Shown: positions 331-60,480, counted from the first letter of the stretch. The stretch: DNA of 64,000 bases from Epiperipatus broadwayi (GCA_028023455.1 JAQFVV010000004.1:16802001-16866000); one strand, 5' to 3'. Numbers and translations are program-made. Notes: a model not told the origin generated them from the sequence alone.

Positions 331-625
331 ATTGCAGTGAAGAGAGATAAAGAGAAAAGAAGGAATAAAACAACTCTAATCAATTAAAACAAAAATGTTA
401 GTCTTATTTTTTTTCTTTTCTTTTAAAGCTTTATTTATTTATCTATTTCAAAAGTTAAAATTAAAAATTGTTAAATAATTTACTAAAAAAAATTTATGAA
501 TAGTTAGTGAAAAGAAAAGAAAATGTTTCACTCAGTATTTTTTTAACATTAAAATCAAAATTGATAGGTAAATTAATGAAGAGAGTGGATAAAAATTGTT
601 TATTTCATACTTTTTTTTTCTTTTA

Positions 626-698
626 CAATCATTTATCACATGATCACATCTCTATACTGTATGGAGAGTTTTGCCTTTGTTTTCAATCATTTATCACA
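626..698 (+). mobile_element. Internally deleted copy of the HHR retroposon (family 1) with 15-bp TSD
   Basis: Direct repeat CAATCATTTATCACA at 626-640 and 684-698. The element 5' end (TCACATGATCAC..TCTCTATACT) is fused to its 3' end (GTATGGAGAGTTTTGCCTTTGTTTT), both matching the full copy at 58715-58907. Confidence 0.75.
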
Positions 699-981: not shown

Positions 982-3900
982 CATCATCATCAACCATTAT
1001 CAATCCATTGCAGGATGAAGGTCTCTCCAAGTTTAATCCATCTTCTCTGATCTTTAGCTTCTCTTTTCCGCAACACCCCTGCACATTTTCTTATTTCATT
1101 CATCCATCTCACATGTGGTCTCTTTCTGGGTCTTTTACAATCTCTTGGAATCCAGCTTAAAATTTCAATCGTCCATCTATTATCATTTCTTCTAGCAATA
1201 TGTCCAGCCCAACTCCATTTCAATATTCTAATTTTTTCAATAAGGTCAGTAACACCTGTTTGTTGTCTTACCCATACCTTGCGTTTTCTATCTCTTCTTG
1301 TTACTCCCAACATACATCTCTCCATACTCCTTTGAGTGGTCTGAAGTCTTTGTATTGCTCTTCTGTTAAGTGTCCAAGTCTCAGATCCATAAGTAAGAAC
1401 TGGTAAAACACATTTGTTAAAAACCATTCTTTTCAAACACATAGGCATATTTCCTTTTAATATCAAGTTATTTCTACCAAAAGCACTCCAACCAAGTTTA
1501 ATTCTATGATTAATTTCCTCCATTATGTTTCCATCTGTATTAATAATCTAACCAAGGTAGTTGTAACTGTTAACTCCTTCTAATTCTTCATAATCAATCT
1601 TTATTTTCATATTTTGAGCAAATCGATTAAACATTACTTTAGTCTTTTTAACATTTATCTTTAGTCCTACTTTTCTACTTTCATCTGCTAACTCCTGCAA
1701 CATTTCCTGCAGCTCTGAAGCATTATTTGCAAAAACAACTACATCATCTGCAAAATCCAAATGACTTAAATACTCTCCATTTACTTTCATTCCTTTAGTT
1801 TCCCATTTTAATCCACAAAATACTTCTTGCAGCACTGCTGTAAAAAGTTTTGGAGATATGGAGTCACCTTGTCTTAAACCTTTCTCAATGTTGAACTTTC
1901 CAGTATCATTATGTAATCTAATTGTTGCTGTTGCATTTTTATAAATATTCTTTAAAATATGATAATATCCTGGATCTATACCTTGATGATCCAATGCTTT
2001 AATCACTGAAGAAATGTGTATAGAATTGAATGCCTTTTCATAATCTACAAATCCAAAACATAATGGCAACTCATATTCATTTGTCCTTTCTATGACTTCT
2101 CTCAATACCTGGATATAATCTAAGGTACTAAAACCACTTTTAAATCCAGCTTGTTCTCTTGTTTGGTGGAAATCCAAAGTTCTCTGTAGACGAGTTGTAA
2201 TTATCTTGGTAAAATTTTTATATAAAACTGATAAAAGGCTGATAGGTATGTAATTTCTAATATCTTCTTTATCACCTTTTTTAAATATTAATATTATTAC
2301 AGCATTCTTCCAATCTTTCAGTATATCTTTATCATTTAGACATTTGGTATATAACTTTGCTAAAATTGTTTCTATTTCTTCACCTGCTTCTTTTAATATA
2401 TCAATTATAATTCCATCATTTCCTGGAGCCTTTCCTTTCTTCATACATTTAATTGCATGTCTCACTTCTTCATTTAAAATTCTGGGCAATTCGGAAGATG
2501 TAATAGATATAGGAGGTACTTGTTCTTTATTACTATATAATTCTTGATAAAAATCTTCTACCAATTTTATGATGTCATCTCTCTTTTTAGTAATAATTCC
2601 ATCTTTTTTTCTTATTGCAGATATAAATTTCCTACCAATACCAAAATGTTGTTTAACATTCTTGAGACTTTTATTTTCTTCTACAGCTTTCCTTGCTATT
2701 TCACAGTTATACTTTCTTATATCATTTTCAACTCTTTTCCGTACCATTTTACAAAATTCGAGATATTCAATTCTTTTTAATACATCATTTTTGTATATCT
2801 TTATATTCCTTCTTTTCTTCATAAATTCTCTAGTCTCAGTAGAAATTTTATTAGTCAATTGCTGCTTTTTTCTACCAGCTATCTTTGTTGCAGTTTTTAA
2901 AAGTGTATCAGTTATTTTCATATTAATTTCATTCAAATCTGAATCATGTTCAAAATCTCCTAACACTTGAAACCTATTTGTAAGTTCTAATTTAAATTCA
3001 TTAGAATGTTTCTGAAGATTAGGAATATCAACTGTAAATATTGTTTTTCTTAATAATTTTTGTCTCTCTAGTTTTACATTAACACGTAACTTACACCTTA
3101 CTAATTGATGATCACTTCCTGTGTTAAATTTATTAAGAACATTACAATCTTGAAATATGTATTTCCTGTTAGTCAAAATATAATCCAATTCTGCTGTACC
3201 TTCATTTAGATGCTTCCATGGACATTTCCTTTTAACATTTTTCACAAAAAATGAATTCATAATATAAAGTTTTTCTTTTTCTGCAAACTCCACAAGTCTA
3301 TGTCCTCTCTCATTTCTATTACCATAACCAAAATTACCTACAGCAATTTCATCTTTCATTTGTCTACCAATTCTAGCATTAAAGTCTCCCATAACAATTT
3401 TAAAATGTTGTTTACTCTGATCAAAAGCCTTTTGTACATCCATATAAAAATCTTCTACTACTTCATCACTATGAGAACTTGTTGGGGCATAAACCTGAAT
3501 TATCTGCATTTGGTATCTGCTATTAAGTTGTATAACTAATCTTGCAACTCTGTCTGATACACCATCAATCTCCACAATATTGTTCTTCCACTTTTTATTT
3601 ATAATGAATCCTACTCCACTTGTATTTCCAATATTTGTGCCTTTATAATAGAGTATATGTCCACTTTTTAAATCAATTGTTTCTTCACCTTTTCTTCTAA
3701 CTTCACAAAGTCCAATAATGTCCCATTTAGTATAAGACAATTCTTCTTCTAATTCTTGCAATCTTCCTTCACTTGAAAGTGATCTGCAGTTGTAAGTACC
3801 TAAATAAAAAGTCATCATCAAATGGCAGCCTGGGTCCACAATCAGGGGATTCTTAGCACCCTCCGCCTTCGGCCACCAACCGCCGCCTTGGTTGGTGACT

Positions 3901-4289
3901 TTACAGCCTCCTGGGAATAAGGGCCATGCTTTATTTTTGTCTGTCATAATTGTATATATGTATTGGAAAAATATTTATCATTTACACAAACATTCATTCT
4001 GCCTTATCAGGCACTGAGAAGAAAGACCATGGTGTTTCTTGATCTTAAACTCAGAGGTAAAAAGCCAATAAATTCACCACGCTGGCTAATGCGTGTTGGT
4101 GAGCAGCCCATCCATGTTCGTATACTATATGAATAATCACATAGTAATAACAGCTGCAATGACAAGAACGTATGGAGTGGACATTAGGAATTTGCCCTGC
4201 TCAGTTCCTTTAAGGCCTCCAAGAGGAATCAAAGGGTCTCCTTTCAGTTAATAGCAAACTCCTTTCTGCAGCAAAAAAAAAAAAACAAC
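982..4289 (-). mobile_element. RTE-clade non-LTR retrotransposon, near full length
   Basis: Single APE+RT ORF, (TGA)n tail at 982-990, ~320-bp 5' region. Possible 9-bp TSD AACACATAT at 973-981 and 4290-4298; the 5' boundary is less certain than the ORF. Confidence 0.95.
990..3947 (-). pseudogene. RTE ORF (APE endonuclease + reverse transcriptase) with one in-frame TAG at 1548-1550
   Basis: APE motifs TYNCRSL, GLCEVRR, VYAPT, MGDFNA, LDYIL, SDH; RT motifs QAGF, DYEKAFN, RQGDSISPKLF, FADD; RTE C-terminus LTYGSETW, WSWAGH. ORFs 1548-3947 and 990-1523 are in the same frame (YLG*IINTDGNIMEE). Confidence 0.95.
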
Positions 4290-9000: not shown

Positions 9001-9067
9001 ATGTATTTTTAACATGTATATACCAGAAATTAAAAATGCACAGAGACAAAACTTTCTGTATAAAAGC

Positions 9068-9205
9068 ACCGATCAGTACAAACCAGAGTAATCAATGGAT
9101 GCAGGAAGGTTTGTGCATAGAATCCCTATCTAAGGCCTACTCATCCAATATCCCTGGACAAGTTTCTAGCTTGTGGCTTTCATCAGTGAGTATCCTTGGA
9201 TCTGA
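9068..9205 (-). mobile_element. HHR retroposon family 1, partial decayed copy
   Basis: Matches 58750-58880; sense CUGAUGA-AAGC(CACAA)GCUA-GAAA-CUUG-UC; proximal stem I mismatched. Confidence 0.8.
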
Positions 9206-9328
9206 GAGCACTGCATCTGGATCTTAGGATCTAATGTAACTCAGCAACATCCATCTTTTACTTTTTTAGCTAACTATGATGCTTTGAGTCCAAAATGAAA
9301 ACACAATGCTTGCACTGAGTTTGCTAAT

Positions 9329-9395
9329 ATATGGAGAGTTTTGCCTATGTGAAAAACAGCTTGTGTAAGCACAAAGAATGGTAATCATGTGAAGT
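9329..9395. repeat. Family 1 end fragment (3' end joined to inverted 5' end)
   Basis: TATGGAGAGTTTTGCCT...AATCATGTGA; same arrangement at 55565-55627. Confidence 0.6.
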
Positions 9396-10478: not shown

Positions 10479-10550
10479 GCGTTGGTGGTCGAGTGGCAAG
10501 CACAGCTGCCTTACAAGGAGTTATCCCAGGTTCACTTCCCGGCCGATGCT
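10479..10550 (+). pseudogene. tRNA-Gly(TCC)-derived pseudogene/SINE head with anticodon changed to TAC
   Basis: GCGTTGGTGG..GCTGCCTTACAAGGAGT..GGTTCACTTCCCGGCCGATGCT aligns with eukaryotic tRNA-Gly(TCC) as I recall it; degenerate T-loop and anticodon stem. Confidence 0.8.
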
Positions 10551-22360: not shown

Positions 22361-22716
22361 CATCAGGTTATTCAATGCATCTGAGATAAATAGTGACTCA
22401 GGACATCCTCAGAAAAAAATACAGGAAATAGAAAATCCTGACTTTTACCTGTGAATGAAAAAGATGACCCAATATCTTTAATAAAAAGTAAAAAAGTAAA
22501 AATAATTTCTCACAATACAGAAACGGAACTAGAATATTATACAGAAGAAGAAAATCTCTAGTTTCGAAAATGATTAGTAATAATCATTAGTGTATTTATC
22601 TGAAATGGATGGCGCTAAAGTTGTGAGTGGAGGGAGTTTGACAATGGTAAATGAAAATGTAACAATTTACTCTAGATAAATACTTTGCATATAATAAATA
22701 TATATATGAGAGATAG

Positions 22717-22771
22717 TGACCTGGGCCAATTGATGAGTGCTGTTTCAGCACGAAATGCATCTTGAGGGTCA
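22717..22771 (+). ncRNA. Type I hammerhead ribozyme motif (family 3, copy 1; C3U)
   Basis: UGACC.UGGG.CCAA-UUGAUGA-GUGCUG(UUU)CAGCAC-GAAA-UGCA-UC-UUGA.GGGUCA. Confidence 0.8.
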
Positions 22772-23125
22772 TTTGTCTTTTATTGTATCTTTATTTATAT
22801 GAATTTGAAAAGAATTGGGGAAATGTGGAGATGTTTATTATATCTATAAATATATTACATACGGGACAGAGAAAGGTGAATTACTCCGTGTGTGTAAATT
22901 CTAAAAAATCAGATATATTAATCTTTAGCTGAGGTTTAAAGTTTATATCTGTACTAGAGATAATCTCTAGGTTCGAAAATGGTTAGTAATAATCATTAGT
23001 GCATTTATCTGACATGGATGGCGTCAAAGTTGTGAGTGGAGGGAGTTTGACAATGGTAAATGAAAATGTAACAATTTACTCTAGATAAATACTTTGCATA
23101 TAATAAAGATGAATATGAGAGATTG

Positions 23126-23180
23126 TGATCTGGGCCAACTGATGAGTGCTGGTTCAGTACGAAATGTATATTGGGGGTCA
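23126..23180 (+). ncRNA. Type I hammerhead ribozyme motif (family 3, copy 2; intact core)
   Basis: UGAUC.UGGG.CCAA-CUGAUGA-GUGCUG(GUU)CAGUAC-GAAA-UGUA-UA-UUGG.GGGUCA. Confidence 0.85.
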
Positions 23181-24399
23181 TTTGTCTTTTATTGTATCTT
23201 TATTTATATGTATTTGAAAAGAATTGGGGAAGGGTGGTGCTTGTTATACCTATAAAGAAGAAAATATCTTAGATGAGCTGGGTGTATCATGCAATTTGAA
23301 TGTCTCAAATGAGGTCTCTATTAGATCACTGGGGATTTTTCAGTACCAGAATGAGACCATGACTTGCAAAAAAATAATACTTTTTACATTATTAATTAAT
23401 ATTTGCATGTATAATATTATATCCTAGTTATCGTTGTATGTGTTTTTTTTTCTTTAATTGTTAACTAAATAGGTTTTCGATAATGATTACTGAAATAAAA
23501 AATGTATTCTTTATATATATATAATTAATGATAATATTAATTTAATTTTATTAAAGTTGATTCTGAAAATAAATATTGGAGCTTTTAATATTAGGGGGAC
23601 GAATTCAATAAAGAAAGTTTCACAGCTGACTAAGTGGTGTGATATTGTTCAAGTGCACATTTTGGTCTCATTAGAGATTAAGATTTATAATAGTTCTCAA
23701 ATTGACTGACTTTCTTAGTAACAAAGATTTCTCCATTTTTTCTAAAACCTGCTCTGTATTGTCAGGAAGAAAGGGTTCTTCAATTACAAACACATGCAAA
23801 TTTAAATCATTTAACATTCTGTATATAGATTCACATATAATAATAATGTTTCATCACAATGCCATCACCTTAAACATAATTTTTGTATACATTACTATCA
23901 GGTTATGTTATTTTAAAGAGATTAATTTAAAAAATAAACACAATTCTTGCAGCCACTCCATTCCCTGTCCTACTATTTGGGTATTTCAATATCTCATGAC
24001 ATTTTTTTTAAACAAAAGATACCATAGACAGAGTTTTCCTTAATAAGTGGAGAGGGCTATTTACATAACTCAGTTTCATTCAATAATATGTCACTAATAG
24101 AGCTAATGTTTCATTCACTAATGCTACATTGTAATATTAGTATTAATTAAAAAAATTCCAAGATCTCAGATCATCTACCTTTAATTGTTACATTAGACAT
24201 ATATGCAATGTATAAGACTCTGATTCACACAAACAAAATAATAAGAGTGCTCTTGCCAAGTTGCACTACTGAATTATTATATTCTAACATTCACATAATC
24301 CTATACAAGATTAGAAACCTTAAATTACATCCTGCACAGGCCTAACTATCATTTGTAAATATTGTCTCACATACAATAGACCGTGTTTCTTGTAATAAA

Positions 24400-44898: not shown

Positions 44899-45423
44899 TT
44901 ATTTATCGTAGAATTTTTCATAAAGTTGGGGTAAAATCATCATTCTCATTATTTCTTGATTAACATTTTCTTCAATTTTCCATGAATAGCATATAATTTT
45001 TCGTTCATATTTTTCAAATAATTTGCCCCAAGCATGAAATAAATATCCTTGTTTACCATCAAGATTTTTATATTCAATTTGAGTAGTAAGTTGCTTTTTT
45101 AATTCTTTAGCTAATCCACTGGAATATGCTTCTAGTTCATCAACAACAGATAAGGCAGATATATTGACTGTTTTAGGTAATCCATTACAACGAAATTCGC
45201 TCCGAATATCATTTAATGGGCAAATACACCTAATTACACCTGTACCATCATCAATATAAATTATAAATTCATTTTCTTTTCTTTGTACTTTTATTATTAT
45301 ACCAAAAACATCAACCTTTGTAACACTTATGTTTTTATAAAGAAAAACTCCTTTCTGATGAGGGTCTTCTGGAATTATCAAAAAATCACGAATATACATC
45401 TGACAATGCATCAAAGAATCCAT
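44899..45423 (-). CDS. STN1: CST complex subunit STN1 (OBFC1) homologue, N-terminal OB fold only
   Basis: MYIRDF..KGVFLY..VDVFGII..IDDGTGVIRCIC and WKIEE..QEIMRMMILPQLYEKFYD match human STN1 LYIRDI..PGVFLY..VDVLG..VDDSTGVINCIC and ARMLELPTIYRKVYD. Strong T-run-CAG acceptor at 45434-36, so the exon likely starts at 45433 with an upstream exon. Confidence 0.9.
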   Translation of the reverse strand: MDSLMHCQMYIRDFLIIPEDPHQKGVFLYKNISVTKVDVFGIIIKVQRKENEFIIYIDDGTGVIRCICPLNDIRSEFRCNGLPKTVNISALSVVDELEAYSSGLAKELKKQLTTQIEYKNLDGKQGYLFHAWGKLFEKYERKIICYSWKIEENVNQEIMRMMILPQLYEKFYDK

Positions 45424-45848: not shown

Positions 45849-46056
45849 TGCAATTAATATTATGAGTTATATAGTTATTTATAAACACACTAAATAAAAG
45901 ACTAATTGTATATTAGTTATTAACATCAAAAAATATATAATCACATGACCTCAGCTTACACAAATGCTTTTCAGGAGCAAACTACTACCACCTATTGTTA
46001 AGCTTGAGTAATCAGTTCTTATTAAATCCTTATCTAATGCTGTTTTGTTCACATCG

Positions 46057-46095
46057 CCAGACCAGAAACTAGCTTATGGTTTTCATCAGTGAGGA
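46057..46095 (-). repeat. Family 1 HHR fragment with an in-place 11-bp inversion
   Basis: CCAGA-CCAGAAACTAG-CTTATGG..TCATCAGTGAGGA versus CCAGA-CTAGTTTCTGG-CTTGTGG at 58829-58851. Confidence 0.6.
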
Positions 46096-49000
46096 GTTTT
46101 TTTTAGTACAATCAAATTGCAGACTGATCAAGATAAGAATATTGTTTTATTTTAGTGATCTAAGAGTTAATCCAGAAATCTTTAGCTTTTGAGTTTACCA
46201 TTCTAGAGCAGGAATGCCTTTACACTCAATAATAATAAAAATTATACACCAAAACTGGCATATATAAGCTAATGTTTTATGCTTTATTCTCAGCTGAGAA
46301 ATATAGCAATAGACTGAATTAAAAAAAACATTGAATAATTCCTAATTTATTGATGAAGATTTGAAGTCAATGTTGTCTAGGTAAAAAAAATCCTTTTACT
46401 AAATAATCTCGGTATAAGATGGTTGCAAATGTTTTAATTTTCTATTTTAAATTACAACCAATTATCTTTCCCATAATGACACAAATCAATTAAGACTGAT
46501 AAAGTTTCTGAATGTATAGAGATATGGCTGTTGTTGCAAGAAGATTTGGATAAAACAAATCAACTTTAACCCAAAGATTTAGTCTCTGGTTTGATTTAAA
46601 AAAAAAACAATAACTTTGTGATAACTACTCCAGACAATATTTAATGGTGAATACAAATAGATTCATACTTATAATATTTAATATTCCAATATTAATAAAA
46701 ACCTGATAGTAGCATATAAAAAGAATGTAAATCAAATCTTGCCCTTTATTTCAAACTGTAAAGGCAATCATATTTCTCTCTTGACTAATGAAATAAGAAA
46801 AGTGATTCAGAACATGCATAAAATCTTTTGCTGCTGCTCACATCAAGGAGATATTTTTTTGTTAATGAATTAATTGTTTTGAGGAGAATACATATTCAAA
46901 ATCTTTGGCAATAAGTATCCTCCAAATAACAATCATATTGCATCTGAAAATAATTACTTTTAATTAACTATACATAAATTTGTCACAATGAGTGTGTCTC
47001 AACAGATTTGAGTATTTTTGAGATAAGTTACCCAGTCACTATCATGAAAATCTACATGTACATAACCAATATAAATTTTTTGAATTTGGTAAGGAATAAA
47101 AAAAAAGTCTAATGAATCTAGTATACTCCAGAAGTATCTTTAAAGCAACTCACTCCCAGATATTTTTTAAAATTATTTTTTATTATTTCAGATACAACAA
47201 TATTAGCAGCAAGATAGAACAATGCTATACTTAAAATTAATCCACATAAGACTGAAATTAGGAACCTAATCTTTATCTTGGCATAGATCTTTATGAATGA
47301 AGCGAAGCCAATTTTTGTTGAAATTTCTCAATATCTTGTTGGTGTTGATAAGTGAGACACTCAGTAGCATTCATCACAAAAAGGAAAATAATTTCTTATT
47401 GAACATTAGAGATCACATTGCAGATTTATAATGAAAGATTTAGATTCTGTGACTAACTTATGAGATATTCATTAATTATGCATAAATTCACAACACCCTT
47501 GCAAATAATATGAACTTCATAATTCTTATAACTTTATTTTTTGAGTTAGTAATAAACTGATGGATGATGTGAAAAGAGGATTCTCAGACAATCTTGTCAC
47601 AGCAAGTTCTTATAATTTGTTATAGTAATGGTATACTACAAACTTCCTTAAATGTTAGTAAAAATGTTCAATTAACAACTAGTAATAACAGAAATTTTAT
47701 AACAAGACTATCTGGAAAATTAACTGGACCAATTATAATCATGTATAGTTAGTAAATATAATATGATATTATCTGGCATTTTGGACCGTATTGAGATTTA
47801 TAGTCTAATATTTCCCATTAGCTTGGAAATGCTCATATTTTTGCCATTACGATAGCAAGTTCATCTCATTCTTATAAATTATATCCAATTAATCCTAAAA
47901 ATCTCTAGATAAACATTTAAACCAATCACTATATCACTCATTGATCCATTATATTTTAAGGGTATTTATATGAATTATGACACATTTATCATAATTCATC
48001 ATGGATTTCTTAACTTTCTAATTCTTGTAACTTAGTCTTCTAATGCTACATTTAAAAAATTCCTATATAGTGCACATTAAGCAACTATATTAACTCTATA
48101 ATAAAAAAAAGGCAATTATTTTAATTTAATATTTATCTTAGCTTTAATTTAGTCATGCACCTATTAATAGATTACAATTGTTATTTATCTTATACATGTA
48201 TAATAAAAGTATCAAGTGAGTCAACACAATATTGGAGAAAATAACCAAGATTTATAATTTAACAAGAAGATTAAACAAATGTTATCGAGGATCTATTATC
48301 TTAGAATAAACTATATATCATCTTAGGCATTCTATCAACACAGATTCCTTGGAATATTTTAAATCTTAATAATGCTTAACATATTAGTTTTGTTGTCTTT
48401 AATATTTAATAATCCATTTTAGTAAGAATATCCTAAAGATTAATATTTAAGGTACACAGCTTATCTAAAACATCAGCTAGGAATTAATAGTATTCTTTTT
48501 ATATTATTTAATGCTGTATTATCCTGTTTGGCCAATCTCTTTACTATTGAAAGTATACTCATGATGCTAAATAGATGCAGATGAATGCAATGAGAATATT
48601 AAAACTTCAATAATACTAATGATATTCTAAACTTAAGAAACAATAATTATGATATGCAAACTGAAACTAATGTAATGTTTAAAGAATCATCATCAAAAAT
48701 AGTATCATGAATTATTCCTTTATCTAGAGGAACATTAAAACCCTATTAATTAAGCTGTGCATCTTGCTTATCAGTATACAACTCTGCAGTTTGCATAATT
48801 ATTTATGACATTTGGCTTCTGGTTCCCTAAACTTTAACAATGAAAGGATATACTGGACCTATTCTGAATCAGGATTTCATGGAATATGTTAAGTCAGGTA
48901 AGTCATTATTTAATAAAATCAGAATTTTCATGGTCATTACTAGACAAAATCAGAGCTTTAACAGACACACCTATCTAGTATAACGCATAGACATATTCAG

Positions 49001-54400: not shown

Positions 54401-55564
54401 ATGAATGATTTATGCATGTAAACAATTAAATAAAATTTAATATCATTTTTCTTTTTTTAACATTTAAATTTTCTTGTCACATTATCAATTAATTTTTAAA
54501 TAATGTAATTCTATTAATTTATATTTATTACATATCTTTTCTACATGTGTATCAGTTGTATGAGATTGTGTGGATAGTTGAATGGTGCTTGAAAATCTGA
54601 GTTCAAGTCCCCTATACTTATTACATAAGCCTAATTCTCAATATAGTCATAGTGTGATCCAGTCAGATAAGTCATTCTAAAGATAAAAATTCAGCATGAA
54701 TTTGAATTTTCTATGAATTGGAGATTAATTTGCCCAGGAAAAAAACAACAATCTGCAACCTTCACAAAAAATCACTTAAAAAGTAAAAGTGGCAGAATTA
54801 TATATTCTTTTCACAAGAAGAATTAGTTGACCTCTCAGAGACATTATAAATAATCATATCTTATGTAATCTTGATACACTCCTATGCATTCTCATGTCTC
54901 TCAACATAGTAAATTATAGGCAAGCAAACTCTGACTGAAAAGAAAAGAGCTGAACTGCATTGATTCATTCCATATCAAAATGTCATTTCACAATATGGGA
55001 TAAAAAGGATAAGAAATTATAGTGAATTATTTTGTTAACAAATTTATAATAAATACTATCACTAATACAAATCAGAATCTAAAGTATTTATATAGACAAC
55101 ATGACAATCAAAGCATATTTAGGGCATTAAAGAAAAGTAAGAAAATCGTAAAAAATAAAAAAAATTATTTGTAAAATCGATCTGAAAATAAAAATATTAT
55201 CAAAAAAAAAAAAAAGTGCAAAATTTAATTGCAGTAAAGTAACAATATTTTTAATTTTTTAAATTCTGGTCTTAATCTTAAAGTTTTGATTTATTCTTGT
55301 ACAGCAGTAACCTTGTAACTATGTCCACATCATGCTTGGAGTTTTGTAAACGACTGGTGTATATTAATAAAACATGCTGATTTATTTAATGCTCTTATAG
55401 ATGGCTTGGAAGAGAACTCCAATAGGCACTTGAAGTTAAATTTATTAAAAATCATGTCATCTTGGTGATGTTTTGATTGTAAATGAGTTTCGTCATTTTC
55501 TTATTTGAAAATACAAAGACATTCATATCTTAAAGTTTTAACTGAAACATGGCAAAATTATCGA

Positions 55565-55627
55565 CTGTATGGAGAGTTTTGCCTGTTTTAACAGCTCGAA
55601 CAAGCATAAGAAGTAATGATCATGTGA
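55565..55627. repeat. Family 1 end fragment
   Basis: CTGTATGGAGAGTTTTGCCTG...GATCATGTGA. Confidence 0.65.
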
Positions 55628-56611
55628 TATTTAGTATTTTCTGCTATCTTATAATGGTGTATTGACTGCTTCATGAGCTTTAAAAAATCAAATAGCTAAG
55701 CTTTGATCAAATTTAATGAAAATGGGTTTGATTTTCTTTATCGGCTTAATGCTATTTGCCAACATTAGCATAATTTATGATATTCAGAGTTTTCAATCTC
55801 CACTGACACTTTTAGCAGAATAAAAATGGTTTTTAACAATTGCCCGATTCTTTGTATTTACATATCTACATTGATGATAAGGACATTTAGTTAATTTTAG
55901 ATCGTCACTCATTTTATATACCAATCAAGAGTGATTTAATCACGTTATTTCTATTCCATAGCAGATTGTGTTTTTCTAGAAAGTTTATTATTTTAACAGA
56001 ATCAGAGTGAAAAATCAAATTATGCACTTTCTCAGTAAAAAAAAAAAAAAAAAAGGCAGTGATTTGTTTATATTTTAACAATGTTTTTAAATAGATAGGT
56101 TGTGTTTCTCTAATTTTTTTTCCACAATATTTTTAAGTTAACTTCAATAATACCAATATATATGGCTATCTCTTAACTGTACATCATGACGATTGAGTTA
56201 TTATATCTTTTAACAGTAAGAAAACATTCATACTAGGGTTCAGCAAACTTTTTAACATAAAAAGCCATTTGTTTGAATACTCCCCAATAAAAGAGCAGCA
56301 AGGAAAGAGGTAAAAATAGGTTCATAAAAAATATGAATTTCCTAATAGTTGTGGATCTATTTGAACATTTCTTTTAGTAATAGAACATAAATTATAAAAA
56401 CTCTCTTAAAAATAAACAAACAAAAATTACTTTGATAGTTTGATTTATTCATAAAATTTCTAATATTTAAACATTAATATATAATAATAATAATAATTAT
56501 ATAATAAGACTGAATTCAAGAAACAGTGTTGTAAAGTACACTTTTCCTCTTCTAGGGTCATCAAAATATTTATTTACAAATTACAAGAGGAAATAAGGCA
56601 TATGTTTATCA

Positions 56612-56931
56612 TGATAAAAAGAGTGTTAAACCATCAAACATCACATGATCACCATCTCTATACTAGCACATAATTTGTTGTAAACAAAGGCAAAACTCCC
56701 CATACAGTAGTGCCACCCTGTGCCAAACAGAGTAATCAATGGATGCCAGAAGGCTTGTGCATAAAATCCCTATCTAGTGCCACAAGCCAGAAACTAGTTT
56801 GGGGATATTGGATGAGTAGGCACTAGATAGGGATTTTATGCACAAGCCTTCTGGCATCCATTGATTACTCTGTTTGGCACAGGGTGGCACTACTGTATGG
56901 GGAGTTTTGCCTTTGTTTGATAAAAAGAGTG
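56612..56931 (+). mobile_element. Family 1 insertion with perfect 100-bp fold-back and 14-bp TSD
   Basis: TGATAAAAAGAGTG at 56612-25 and 56918-31; arms 56682-56781 / 56819-56918 are exact reverse complements; the 37-nt spacer holds the 3' half of the HHR. Confidence 0.9.
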
Positions 56932-58570: not shown

Positions 58571-58714
58571 GATTACTAAGAAATGATGTTGTTTTTAATT
58601 ACCTTTAATAATATCTGCAATTATAATTCACTAAACATAATTTAAAAAATTATCTAATAGCCTGGAGTCAGTGAACAAATTTTTTTTTTTTTATAATTAA
58701 CTCCATAGATATAA

Positions 58715-58907
58715 AACAAGGCAAAACTCTCCATACAATAGTGCCATCCTGTGCCAACCAGAGTAATCAATGGATGCCAGAAGGCTTGTGCATAAAATCC
58801 CTATTGAGTGCCTACTCAACCAATATCCCCAGACTAGTTTCTGGCTTGTGGCCTTCGTCAGTGAGGAACCCTGGATGTGCTAGTATAAGAGATAGTGATC
58901 ATGTGAT
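58715..58907 (-). mobile_element. Full-length family 1 HHR retroposon (193 bp) with 12-bp TSD
   Basis: CCATAGATATAA (58703-14) / CCACAGATATAA (58908-19); sense begins TCACATGATCAC and ends GAGAGTTTTGCCTTGTT. Confidence 0.85.
58819..58876 (-). ncRNA. Type I hammerhead ribozyme motif (family 1, best copy)
   Basis: AUCCA.GGGU.UCCUCA-CUGACGA-AGGC(CACAA)GCCA-GAAA-CUAG-UC-UGGGGA.UAU.UGGUU: 6-bp stem I, palindromic ACUAGU stem III, GUC site; A.A at the base of stem II is non-canonical. Confidence 0.75.
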
Positions 58908-60480
58908 CCACAGATATAACAATTCTAAATCATAAATTCATAAATAAAATGTTTCAAACCTATATGATTTGTTGGAACTGTGTTTGCCATTCTGAAAGTG
59001 AACTTGTATTTGAAAGTTTAAATGTCTAAAATTAAAAAAACTCAAAATTAAATAATTAAAAATTCAAAAATATTTTTTAAAAGAATGAAATTGAAAATTG
59101 AATTTGGGCCAGATAAACTTGGAATTTTTTTTAGACTATAGGCTTACAATTTTTCTTTCAGATAAGTAGTTCATTACCAACCCAGCCTGCCATCCAATTA
59201 TTGGTTGGTAAATGAAAATCTAACTATTTTTTGCTAAAGAGTCAAACAAAGATGAAAAACACTCTAATTATATAGAAGTTGTCAAGCATACGGAGTTATC
59301 CTTTAGAAGATAGTTGAAGAGATTTTGCCTTGCAGTAGATTATATCTGAATATAATCAAATATGCAATTTAAATATTATTGCACTTGAAAAATTATTAAT
59401 TAAATATTTCAGATACTGCAAGGATAAATTATGCATTAGTTTAATTATATACAAATATAAACATTTTTAAGCCATTTTAAATATAATAATAGTGATATAG
59501 CTATTAAATTTGAATGCTAAAATAATTGAATTGTGAGAGTGATAACTAATAATGATGTTCAAGTAGTAATTGTTAGTCATTGTGGATAGTGTAAATCAAT
59601 AAGGGGTTTAGAAAAAGATCGGCAATAGTAAAAGATTTCTTAATGTGTAATGACCAAAAATTACACATAATGAATCTGATGTTGTATTGTGCAATGTCAC
59701 TTCTTGAATTCTGAATACACAACTTGCATATTTTGTATTGCATATGCTGTCATGACACACAACACCAATGAATGTTTCCAAAATACCTTGCCTCAGATTT
59801 GGGGACTATTATATGGTATGAATTGCAATGTTCTGATAGAGTAACTATGAAAAATAAATGACTTAATATTTTCCTGATGACATTTCTCAGTCTATAAGTA
59901 TTAAAATAGCATACTTTAAATTGTATTGTGTTAGAATGTTTGATTTTAATTAAACATTGTTATCTCCTTCTTTTACAGAAAACCTAAGTGTTTGAATGAA
60001 AAACCCTTTAGAATATTTCTTCACCACCATCATTGTATGATTATGTAAGTGTGAATATCATTTTCAGTTTTTTAAATTCAATTCAAACAAATGTAATTCC
60101 ACAAACTGTATTTATTTGAAAAATTATTAGCAATATTTATTTATATTTTAGGATTAAAATATTTTTCAGTTATGGATAAGTGGCTAAATATAAACCATTG
60201 AGGTAAAAACATTTATGATAATGTGGAAGTCTTTGCTACCGGACTGTAGATCTAAACTGACAAAAAAAGAAAAGAAAATATGTTAAATTATTTTTGCGAT
60301 ATGGATTTACTTCTAATAATCATGATAGTAAAGAAAAATCTCTTTCTTTAATTTGTAACGAGGTTTTGGTTGAGGAGATCATGAAATCAACCAAAGTAAA
60401 ACAACTTAATATCAAACAGACAGCATACTATATAATATACCAAAGGAATATTTTGAACTACTTAAAATTTTTTTCTTCTT

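What the first reader, a model, noticed from the sequence alone, without database searches (positions are those of the whole stretch)
58703..58919. A ~190-bp hammerhead-carrying, SINE-like retroposon with long TSDs
At least seven pieces occur in this window (626, 9068, 9329, 46057, 55565, 56612, 58715). It is non-coding, has fixed termini (TCACATGATC...GAGAGTTTTGCCTTTGTTT), no evident tRNA A/B boxes, one type I HHR with compensatory stem II change (GGC/GCC vs AGC/GCU), and 12-, 14- and 15-bp TSDs at three copies. Fixed ends plus long TSDs differ from tandem, permuted animal retrozymes and suggest a ribozyme-bearing passenger of a TPRT element; the partner is unknown.
Basis: partly seen in the sequence, partly recalled or inferred. 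Interest (0 to 1): 0.82.

Follow-up and report, generated by a model that had tools for sequence, protein, structure and literature searches.

The report
Truncated hammerhead retrozyme copy, Penelope-style insertion
The ~190-bp element is a real but cut-down copy of a very abundant 456-466-bp non-coding repeat that carries a hammerhead ribozyme motif and was pasted into this animal genome in the way Penelope-like retrotransposons insert, so it is a new member of a known kind of element and not a new class.

Summary
The sequence facts hold. A 192-bp non-coding insert lies on the minus strand at 58715-58906. It has a 13-bp target-site duplication with one mismatch and a type I hammerhead motif, and related pieces lie at six other places in the window.

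The "190-bp SINE with fixed ends" is not the family's unit. The unit is about 456-466 bp: a 272-bp body with the hammerhead, a ~57-nt tail and a ~127-nt spacer. It forms tandem arrays of at least 7 units.

The hammerhead core pattern occurs 82,050 times in the 5.6-Gb genome. The window's head-to-body junction occurs only 4 times.

Insertions show the published Penelope-like-element footprint:
- a fixed 3' start and variable 5' truncation;
- head-to-head arms (25 close pairs in one order, 0 in the other);
- a tail often on only one arm;
- TSDs of 11-17 bp around whole composites, including one 3.55-kb, ~7-unit foldback.

I read it as an animal non-LTR retrozyme moved by Penelope-type machinery. 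No autonomous partner, RNA or cleavage evidence was obtained. The motif has an A.A where G10.1-C11.1 is usual, and Rfam does not detect it. Earlier notes of this scan describe the same kind of element elsewhere in this genome.

The parts
58907..58919 (-). Upstream copy of the target-site duplication (TTATATCTGTGGA)
   Evidence: 13 bp with one mismatch to 58714-58702.
58875..58906 (-). 'T cap': reverse complement of the family's 3' tail (TCACATGATC...GCACAT). I read it as the remnant of a second, inverted arm cut off within the tail.
   Evidence: the same letters in the opposite orientation follow the body's 3' end in thousands of copies (3,409 exact 33-nt body-tail junctions; 23,278 tail ends).
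58715..58874 (-). Direct arm: the 3' 168 nt of the family body (unit positions ~292-459), 5'-truncated just upstream of the hammerhead. It ends at the family's fixed 3' end ...GAGAGTTTTGCCTTGTTT.
   Evidence: 93-94% identical to long-form copies.
58820..58874 (-). Type I hammerhead motif. Helix I 5' strand 58874-58862; CUGACGA 58861-58855; helix II A-GGC/CACAA/GCC-A 58854-58842; GAAA 58841-58838; helix III C-UA-G-U 58837-58833 (palindrome ACUAGU); C17 at 58832, with the predicted cut between 58832 and 58831; helix I 3' strand 58831-58820.
   Evidence: read directly; the pattern occurs 82,050 times with 0 in the reversed control; unconstrained cofolding of two copies gives the double-hammerhead pairing. 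Rfam is negative.
58702..58714 (-). Downstream copy of the target-site duplication (TTATATCTATGGA). Its first one or two T may belong to the element's end.
56612..56931 (+). Composite insertion of the same family: TSD (56612-56625), T cap with full leader (56626-56675), inverted arm (56682-56781), direct arm (56779-56918), TSD (56918-56931).
626..697 (+). Mini-insertion: a 14-bp TSD CAATCATTTATCAC (626-639 and 684-697) around a 44-bp insert, made of a T-cap piece plus the last ~26 nt of the body.
9044..9391 (-). Older copy (~81% identity) of the AGC/GCU subfamily with the same layout: T cap, ~45-nt inverted arm, then a near full-length direct arm. Its helix I is decayed.
55564..55633 (+). Strongly 5'-truncated arm: the last ~24 nt of the body followed by a diverged tail in sense orientation.
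46053..46096 (-). Decayed fragment of a related hammerhead region; GAAAC is replaced by GUUUC.

Best explanation
The feature is a 5'-truncated copy of a high-copy, non-coding, hammerhead-bearing retroelement of the animal 'non-LTR retrozyme' type. It was inserted by the target-primed mechanism of Penelope-like elements (PLEs).

Shown:
- The family unit is ~456-466 bp: a 272-bp body with the hammerhead motif, a ~57-nt tail and a ~127-nt spacer.
- The unit occurs singly, as partial tandems and as arrays of at least 7 units.
- New copies start at one of two fixed points in the template. One is the body's end, ~119 nt 3' of the predicted ribozyme cut. The other is the tail's end, ~176 nt 3' of the cut.
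- Copies stop at variable 5' points.
- Two arms are often laid down head-to-head in one event, inside one 11-17-bp target duplication. The tail is often on only one arm.

Inferred:
- A PLE reverse transcriptase/GIY-YIG endonuclease nicks both target strands and primes on both, initiating internally on a long or multimeric, uncleaved transcript.
- In the window copy, one arm stopped inside the tail and was joined to the other arm's 5' end at a short homology (CACAT). This gave the appearance of a 190-bp unit with fixed ends.
- The hammerhead would act as a dimer on multimeric RNA to release unit-length RNA. It leaves no mark on the DNA ends.
For: Family unit and tandem structure:
- Alignment of five loci shows body-tail-spacer-body.
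- The tail pattern recurs at exact 466-bp steps, x5 and x7.
- The array in L052+L053 has 5.1 units on the minus strand and ~2.3 on the plus strand, head-to-head. The T cap is on one arm only, and the whole 3.55 kb is flanked by GAGATGTACCTT on both sides.

Copy numbers:
- 82,050 core patterns against 0 in the reversed control.
- 23,278 tail ends, of which 7,999 run on into the spacer.
- Only 4 window-type junctions.

Orientation: all 14 close opposite-strand pairs in the first 100 core hits and all 11 in the first 100 tail hits are (-,+). None is (+,-).

TSDs: 18 of 24 composites score >=11, against 4 of 550 mismatched controls.

Variable arm ends and junctions.

PLE machinery is abundant: 10,242 GIY-YIG candidates, and intact 800-901-aa RT+GIY-YIG frames.

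The footprint matches published descriptions:
- 5' truncation, pLTR-like partial tandems, an inverted 5'-truncated copy and a one-sided tail (PMC8557442).
- Both strands extended, two internal RT start sites that define the tail, and hammerhead cleavage not needed in vitro (PMC11167929).
- Animal retrozymes as PLE derivatives that occur as monomers, dimers and multimers (bioRxiv 10.64898/2026.07.22.740005).
Against: - No autonomous PLE sharing the body, tail or spacer was found. The 12 GIY-YIG loci and 3 full-length PLEs show no DNA or blastx similarity. Their composition also differs: 19-24% GC against 39% for the unit.
- The tail is ~57 nt, longer than the published 30-40 bp.
- There is no RNA evidence. 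All runs were assembled contigs of uncertain type.
- The hammerhead has A.A at 10.1/11.1 and only 3 Watson-Crick pairs in helix II, and Rfam misses it. Among near copies it is no better conserved than the rest of the element (0.936 against 0.926-0.939). Activity is therefore unproven.
Confidence: 0.8

Rival explanations
1. It is a self-standing ~190-bp SINE-like retroposon lineage. It would have its own fixed 5' and 3' ends, be transcribed as such, and be moved by an unidentified TPRT element.
For: Twelve loci hold a head+body form of 184-204 bp with TSDs. Six of them share the junction CACAT|CCA. Two copies (L002, L011) lie in paralogous larger repeats.
Against: Only 4 exact junction matches exist in 5.6 Gb, against 82,050 cores. 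The 12 copies have at least 5 different junctions, and the window copy carries a different internal haplotype from the others. The 'head' is the inverted tail of the large family, and a 5-nt complementarity explains the recurrent joining. There is no Pol III head.
Confidence: 0.07
2. It is a solo or partial terminal repeat (pLTR) of an autonomous Penelope-like element present in this genome, not a separate non-autonomous family.
For: PLE pLTRs carry hammerheads, and the insertion footprint would be identical. As in the Anolis Poseidon element, an ATG inside CUGAUGA opens a 48-codon frame ending at the body/tail border (my reading, compared). Only 15 PLE loci out of more than 10,000 candidates were inspected.
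Against: Arrays of 5 and at least 7 units at 466-bp steps have no room for an ORF. There is no similarity to 15 PLE loci from at least 3 protein families. The hammerhead-like motifs I read behind two of the full-length PLEs (L044, L045) are of another type, U3-A8 with GACUAU/AUAGUC and ACGU.
Confidence: 0.08
3. It is a MITE-like DNA transposon whose terminal inverted repeats are the 33-57-bp head and its inverted copy.
For: Some copies carry the head at one end and its reverse complement at the other: L018 2388-2522, L026, and L002/L011.
Against: TSD length varies from 11 to 17 bp and once exceeds 50 bp. Many composites have the repeat at one end only. Inner ends are variably truncated. Arms are strictly head-to-head, and multimeric arrays lie inside one TSD.
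Confidence: 0.02

Closest known systems
Animal non-LTR retrozymes (Cervera & de la Pena 2020, PMC7229834; Li, Clavereau & Pollet 2026, bioRxiv 10.64898/2026.07.22.740005)
   Same: Both are non-coding, low-GC repeats of a few hundred bp, each unit carrying a type I hammerhead with a short palindromic helix III. Both occur as monomers, dimers and multimers, have TSDs longer than 4 bp, and co-occur with PLEs.
   Different: The unit is slightly longer (456-466 bp against ~150-450 bp). The motif has A.A at 10.1/11.1. Most copies here are dispersed truncated arms rather than long arrays. Expression and circular RNA are unknown. Here the insertion footprint can be read directly: two start sites, head-to-head arms, and one TSD around a multimer.
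Penelope-like element insertions (Craig et al. 2021, PMC8557442; Frangieh et al. 2024, PMC11167929)
   Same: Both show 5' truncation, partial tandems, an inverted 5'-truncated copy at the 5' side, a tail extension that can sit at one end only, variable TSDs, a hammerhead upstream of the start sites, and DNA ends that are not at the ribozyme cut.
   Different: This element has no RT/EN frame. I found no sequence shared with the PLEs I could inspect. The tail is ~57 nt rather than 30-40 bp.
Sm-alpha / Sj-alpha SINE-like hammerhead elements of schistosomes (cited in PMC2770079)
   Same: Both are short, dispersed, high-copy, non-coding retroposons carrying a type I hammerhead.
   Different: Sm-alpha has a tRNA-derived head. 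This family has no tRNA-like part, and its ends are PLE-type.
Non-autonomous Chlamys elements such as MRC1 in Chlamydomonas (PMC8557442)
   Same: Both are short non-coding passengers of PLE machinery that form pLTR-like and head-to-tail multicopy insertions.
   Different: Those elements share 3' ends with known autonomous families and lack canonical hammerheads. Here the partner is unknown and a hammerhead motif is present.

Membership tests
Hammerhead ribozyme, type I | Conserved core C3 U4 G5 A6 N7 G8 A9 / G12 A13 A14 / A15.1-U16.1 / H17 | tested here: met
   CUGACGA ... GAAA C-UA-G U C. N7 is C or U across copies. The core pattern occurs 82,050 times.
Hammerhead ribozyme, type I | Three helices around the core with helix I open-ended | tested here: met
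   Read. Helix I has 5 pairs (one G.U), an internal loop and 3 more pairs. Helix II has 3 Watson-Crick pairs with loop CACAA. Helix III has 2 pairs. All are weak. The single-molecule MFE fold does not give the hammerhead.
Hammerhead ribozyme, type I | G10.1-C11.1 pair closing helix II | tested here: not met
   The family consensus has A10.1 and A11.1; both were fixed letters in the pattern. The sister family F2 has G-C there but U at position 9.
Hammerhead ribozyme, type I | Palindromic helix III / loop 3 that allows a dimeric ribozyme (metazoan and PLE type) | tested here: met
   ACUAGU in this family, ACCAAUUGGU in sister family F2, AUGCAU in the unrelated family at window ~22.7 kb. Cofolding gives the double hammerhead, but it scores no better than shuffles.
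Hammerhead ribozyme, type I | Match to the Rfam hammerhead covariance models | tested here: not met
   No hammerhead hit at gathering score or at E<=10, on either the window copy or a full unit.
Hammerhead ribozyme, type I | Self-cleavage | not testable with these tools
   This needs in vitro transcription of monomeric and dimeric units.
Animal non-LTR retrozyme | Short non-coding unit with one type I hammerhead, repeated head-to-tail | tested here: met
   units at 440-466-bp steps, with arrays of 5 and at least 7 units. There is no coding similarity.
Animal non-LTR retrozyme | Low GC, no LTR/PBS/PPT, and TSDs longer than 4 bp when present | tested here: met
   The unit is 39% GC. TSDs are 11-17 bp. 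I did not search specifically for a PBS or PPT.
Animal non-LTR retrozyme | Expressed as unit-length linear and circular RNA | not testable with these tools
   Only assembled contigs of uncertain library type were available.
PLE-mobilised (Penelope-type) insertion | Variable 5' truncation with a fixed 3' start | tested here: met
   3' ends lie at ...GCCTTGTTT or at the tail's end, and 5' ends are scattered over unit positions 136-307 and beyond.
PLE-mobilised (Penelope-type) insertion | Inverted 5'-truncated copy next to the 5' end (head-to-head arms) | tested here: met
   25 close pairs are (-,+) and 0 are (+,-). See also the composites and the foldback.
PLE-mobilised (Penelope-type) insertion | Tail extension, often at only one end of the insertion | tested here: met
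   Eleven head-to-head composites carry the tail on one arm only; at least four other copies (L018 2388-2522, L026, L002, L011) carry it at both ends. The tail is ~57 nt, against the published 30-40 bp. Up to about two thirds of intact tails do not run on into the spacer; about half after allowing for mutation.
PLE-mobilised (Penelope-type) insertion | Sequence shared with an autonomous PLE (pLTR or 3' end) | tested here: inconclusive
   None was found in 12 GIY-YIG loci and 3 full-length PLEs. More than 10,000 candidates were not inspected.
PLE-mobilised (Penelope-type) insertion | PLE RT + GIY-YIG genes present in the same genome | tested here: met
   One search gives 10,242 candidates, all 150 scored being over the Pfam cut-off. 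Open frames of 800, 885 and 901 aa carry Y.DD (all three) and a literal GIY (L045 and L046; none in the 901-aa L044 frame).
Classical SINE (Pol III head, LINE-dependent) | tRNA/7SL/5S-derived head with A and B boxes | tested here: not met
   ARAGORN finds nothing in the long form. Rfam finds nothing in the full unit.
Classical SINE (Pol III head, LINE-dependent) | Poly(A), simple-repeat or LINE-matching 3' end | tested here: not met
   Copies end at ...GCCTTGTTT directly against the TSD. The family piece near the window's LINE lies on the opposite strand.
MITE / DNA transposon | Inverted repeats at both ends and a fixed TSD length | tested here: not met
   TSDs of 11-17 bp, and many copies carry the repeat at one end only.

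The most novel reading that the evidence does not exclude
The family may be a retrozyme lineage that shares no sequence with any autonomous Penelope-like element of its genome. It would be recognised only through its own ~57-nt tail and start-site region. Its genomic footprints would then be a natural record showing three things: animal retrozyme multimers are made in a single two-armed PLE insertion; reverse transcription starts at two internal sites; and hammerhead cleavage is not needed for this.
Probability: 0.3. Interest if true: 0.5.

Novelty: new member of a known kind. Interest (0 to 1): 0.3.

Why it matters
How animal retrozymes are copied back into DNA is still argued mostly from co-occurrence with Penelope-like elements and from pLTR similarity in frogs. 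This family has at least 82,000 copies, and its insertion record is clean. It shows two fixed start points ~119 and ~176 nt downstream of the ribozyme site. It shows strictly head-to-head arms. It also shows a 7-unit multimer inside one target duplication.

This agrees with the in vitro picture of internal initiation on both strands of an uncleaved template, and it offers a defined RNA for testing that picture. It also shows how rare rearranged products of such insertions can look like a small SINE with fixed ends. That is useful for repeat annotation. It does not reveal a new mechanism or a new class.

Tried and rejected
1. Rfam at gathering score and at E<=10, on the window copy and on a full unit: no hammerhead hit.
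2. Hammerhead conservation compared with the rest of the element among ~78 near copies: no difference, about 93% everywhere. These young copies cannot show selection.
3. Dimer cofolding gives the double-hammerhead pairing, but the energy gain is no better than for shuffled sequences.
4. A TATATAA box about 31 nt upstream of an apparent common 5' end suggested a transcription start. With a full-unit reference the arm ends scatter (unit positions 136-186 and beyond), so the fixed start was an artefact of my first reference.
5. Partner search:
   - GIY-YIG loci and three full-length PLEs show no similarity to the body, tail or spacer.
   - A hammerhead-like stretch 490 bp upstream of the L045 ORF proved to be a separate 288-bp short family, not that PLE's repeat.
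   - The tail piece near the L036 GIY-YIG hit is an unrelated composite insertion.
6. A Pfam scan of the three long PLE frames returned nothing, although one search scored the GIY-YIG domain and the motifs are visible. I did not resolve why.
7. RNA evidence: the only runs were assembled contigs flagged 'RNA?' as a guess. They show the family is abundant in four coded organisms but say nothing about transcripts, ends or circles.
9. Arm 5' ends showed no clustering at the predicted cleavage site in about 30 arms; only one lay at position 200. The sample is too small to exclude a weak effect.

Full report
**What is at the coordinates.**
Read on the minus strand, 58906..58715 is a 192-bp AT-poor island in a 27% GC window. 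It begins TCACATGATC and ends GAGAGTTTTGCCTTGTTT. It is flanked by TTATATCTGTGGA (58919-58907) and TTATATCTATGGA (58714-58702), a 13-bp target-site duplication with one mismatch.

Inside lies a type I hammerhead motif:
- helix I 5' strand, 58874-58862;
- CUGACGA, 58861-58855;
- helix II, A-GGC / CACAA / GCC-A;
- GAAA, 58841-58838;
- helix III, C-UA-G-U, so that ACUAGU is a palindrome;
- C17 at 58832, then UGGGGAUAUUGG.

Two of them are TSD-flanked: 626-697 with a 14-bp TSD, and 56612-56931 with a 13-14-bp TSD.

**The 190-bp form is not the family's unit.**
The window lies in a 5.6-Gb genome. Many relatives of the query match only its 3' 165 nt. They carry the 5' 33 nt nearby in the opposite orientation. 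Longer copies and an alignment of five loci give the real layout:
- a 272-bp body that holds the hammerhead and ends ...GCCTTGTTT;
- then a ~57-nt tail, AATAACAATT...CATGTGATGTTTAGTGGTTTAA;
- then a ~127-nt spacer;
- then the next body.

Exact-pattern counts over the whole genome show the proportions. All reversed-pattern controls gave 0.
- Hammerhead cores: 82,050.
- Tail ends: 23,278, of which 7,999 run on into the spacer.
- Body-tail junctions (33 nt): 3,409.
- Copies of the window's head/body junction: 4.

Twelve short-form copies show at least five different head/body junctions. The window copy carries a different internal haplotype from the others. The commonest junction sits at CACAT. 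This is complementary to AUGUG in the tail and also occurs in the body of some variants. I therefore read the short forms as recurrent joining products, not as one propagating 190-bp lineage.

**Tandem arrays.**
Tail patterns recur at exact 466-bp steps, five times on C1 and seven times on C2. Core patterns recur at 440-456 bp.

I fetched one array (L052+L053). It has 5.1 units on the minus strand followed head-to-head by about 2.3 units on the plus strand. The inverted-tail cap is only on the left arm. The same 12 bp, GAGATGTACCTT, lie on both sides of the whole 3.55 kb. The multimer was therefore laid down in one insertion event.

**Insertion footprint.**
- Composite insertions have the form cap, inverted arm (from the body end back to a variable point), direct arm (from a variable point to the body end). 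TSDs lie around the whole composite.
- TSDs are general. 18 of 24 composites score at least 11, against 4 of 550 mismatched flank pairs.
- Among the first 100 core hits and the first 100 tail hits, all 25 close opposite-strand pairs are in (-,+) order, with 3' ends pointing outwards. None is (+,-).
- Arm 5' ends are scattered.
- The 3' ends are of two kinds: the body end, ~119 nt downstream of the predicted cut, and the tail end, ~176 nt downstream. Up to about two thirds of intact tails stop at the second point; about half after allowing for mutation.

This matches the published footprint of Penelope-like elements point by point. PMC8557442 describes 5' truncation, partial tandems, an adjacent inverted 5'-truncated copy and a tail at one end. 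PMC11167929 gives the in vitro findings: both target strands are cut and extended, reverse transcription starts at two internal sites that bound the tail, and hammerhead cleavage is dispensable.

PLE genes are extremely abundant here. There are 10,242 GIY-YIG candidates. Open frames of 800-901 aa carry the RT Y.DD motif (all three), and two of them (L045, L046) a literal C-terminal GIY; the frames fall into three families 43-48% identical to each other.

**What it is.**
The family is an animal non-LTR retrozyme in the sense of PMC7229834: a short, low-GC, non-coding unit with a type I hammerhead, repeated head-to-tail, with TSDs longer than 4 bp. It was mobilised by PLE-type target-primed reverse transcription. 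This agrees with the 2026 preprint that derives animal retrozymes from PLEs and finds them as monomers, dimers and multimers.

The window copy is a direct arm truncated just upstream of the hammerhead. It is capped by a second arm that stopped inside the tail.

It is not a classical SINE. It has no tRNA-like head and no poly(A) or LINE-like end. The family piece beside the window's LINE is on the other strand. It is not a MITE, because TSD length varies and many composites carry the cap at only one end.

**The hammerhead.**
All core nucleotides are present, and N7 varies between C and U. At the 10.2/11.2 pair, my reading of the first 100 hits gives 70 G-C, 24 A-U, 3 A.C, 2 G.U and 1 C.C. The two Watson-Crick states mark two subfamilies, so this amounts to one or a few compensated changes, not many independent ones.

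A sister family of 288 bp keeps the architecture with G10.1-C11.1, A10.2-U11.2 and a longer but still perfect helix III palindrome (ACCAAUUGGU). It has U at position 9.

There are reasons for caution:
- A.A replaces the usual G10.1-C11.1.
- Helix II has only three Watson-Crick pairs.
- Rfam finds nothing.
- The single-molecule fold is not a hammerhead.
- The dimer fold, although it gives the double-hammerhead pairing, scores no better than shuffles.

Cleavage is therefore plausible as a dimer on multimeric RNA, but unproven.

**What remains open.**
I found no autonomous partner. Twelve GIY-YIG loci and three full-length PLEs share nothing with the unit at DNA or protein level. They are much more AT-rich, and the hammerhead-like motifs I read behind two of the full-length PLEs (L044, L045) are of another type.

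No RNA data were usable. The laid runs are assembled contigs of uncertain type. They show only that the family body is abundant in four coded, presumably related, organisms, and that the long form predominates.

**Earlier notes of this scan.**
Notes on other DNA of the same genome describe hammerhead retroelements inserted as Penelope-style foldbacks, and PLE hammerheads with swapped core pairs. My results on this family agree with the former. I used these notes as leads only.

**Verdict.**
This is a real feature with a correct sequence description. It is a new member of a known kind and of moderate-to-low interest. Its value is as a clean natural record of the insertion mechanism.

Noticed in passing
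window 22553-23253 (+): A second, unrelated hammerhead family in tandem. Two motifs of the form CUGAUGA-GUGCUG...-GAAAUGCAUC lie about 409 nt apart, with helix III palindrome AUGCAU.
   Followed up: partly
window 990-3947 (-): LINE-type ORFs. A 799-aa frame carries an AP-endonuclease domain (Exo_endo_phos) and RVT_1, and a 177-aa frame follows it. It shares nothing with the hammerhead family.
   Followed up: partly
window 44899-45423 (-): A 174-aa open frame with a weak Stn1 (telomere protein) Pfam match (E 5e-8). It may be a host gene exon.
   Followed up: no
window 10479-10550 (+); L036 3289-3390 (same bases as L043 ~222-323): A tRNA-like sequence scores 30.1 bits, just over the Rfam cut-off. 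A related tRNA-like stretch sits between the inverted and direct arms of a composite insertion in L036/L043. This looks like a template switch onto a tRNA-derived SINE RNA during insertion.
   Followed up: no
L021 1155-1209 and 1707-1760: An insertion of tail-spacer-body-tail is flanked by direct repeats of more than 50 bp, far longer than the usual 11-17-bp TSD. It may be a very staggered cut or an insertion into a pre-existing repeat.
   Followed up: no
L044 ~595-645 (+); L045 ~420-470 (-), downstream of the PLE ORFs: The full-length PLEs carry a hammerhead-like motif ~300 nt behind the ORF: UUGAAAA(A/U)-GACUAU...AUAGUC-GAAACGUU. This reads as a U3-A8 core variant with an extra base before helix II and an ACGU palindrome. 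Earlier notes of this scan report such swapped cores.
   Followed up: partly
L045 3513-3800 (-); L048-L051: A sister short family of 288 bp with more than 1,600 candidates and tandem steps of ~404-420 bp. It is about 72% similar to this family over the ~50-nt hammerhead region. Its motif has U at position 9 and is G/A polymorphic at position 12.
   Followed up: partly
L044, L045, L046 (three PLE ORFs): Pfam hmmscan returned no family for the three 800-901-aa PLE frames, although the GIY-YIG model found the same loci in the genome search. Extreme Lys/Asn/Ile-rich composition (19-24% GC) may trip the bias filters.
   Followed up: no
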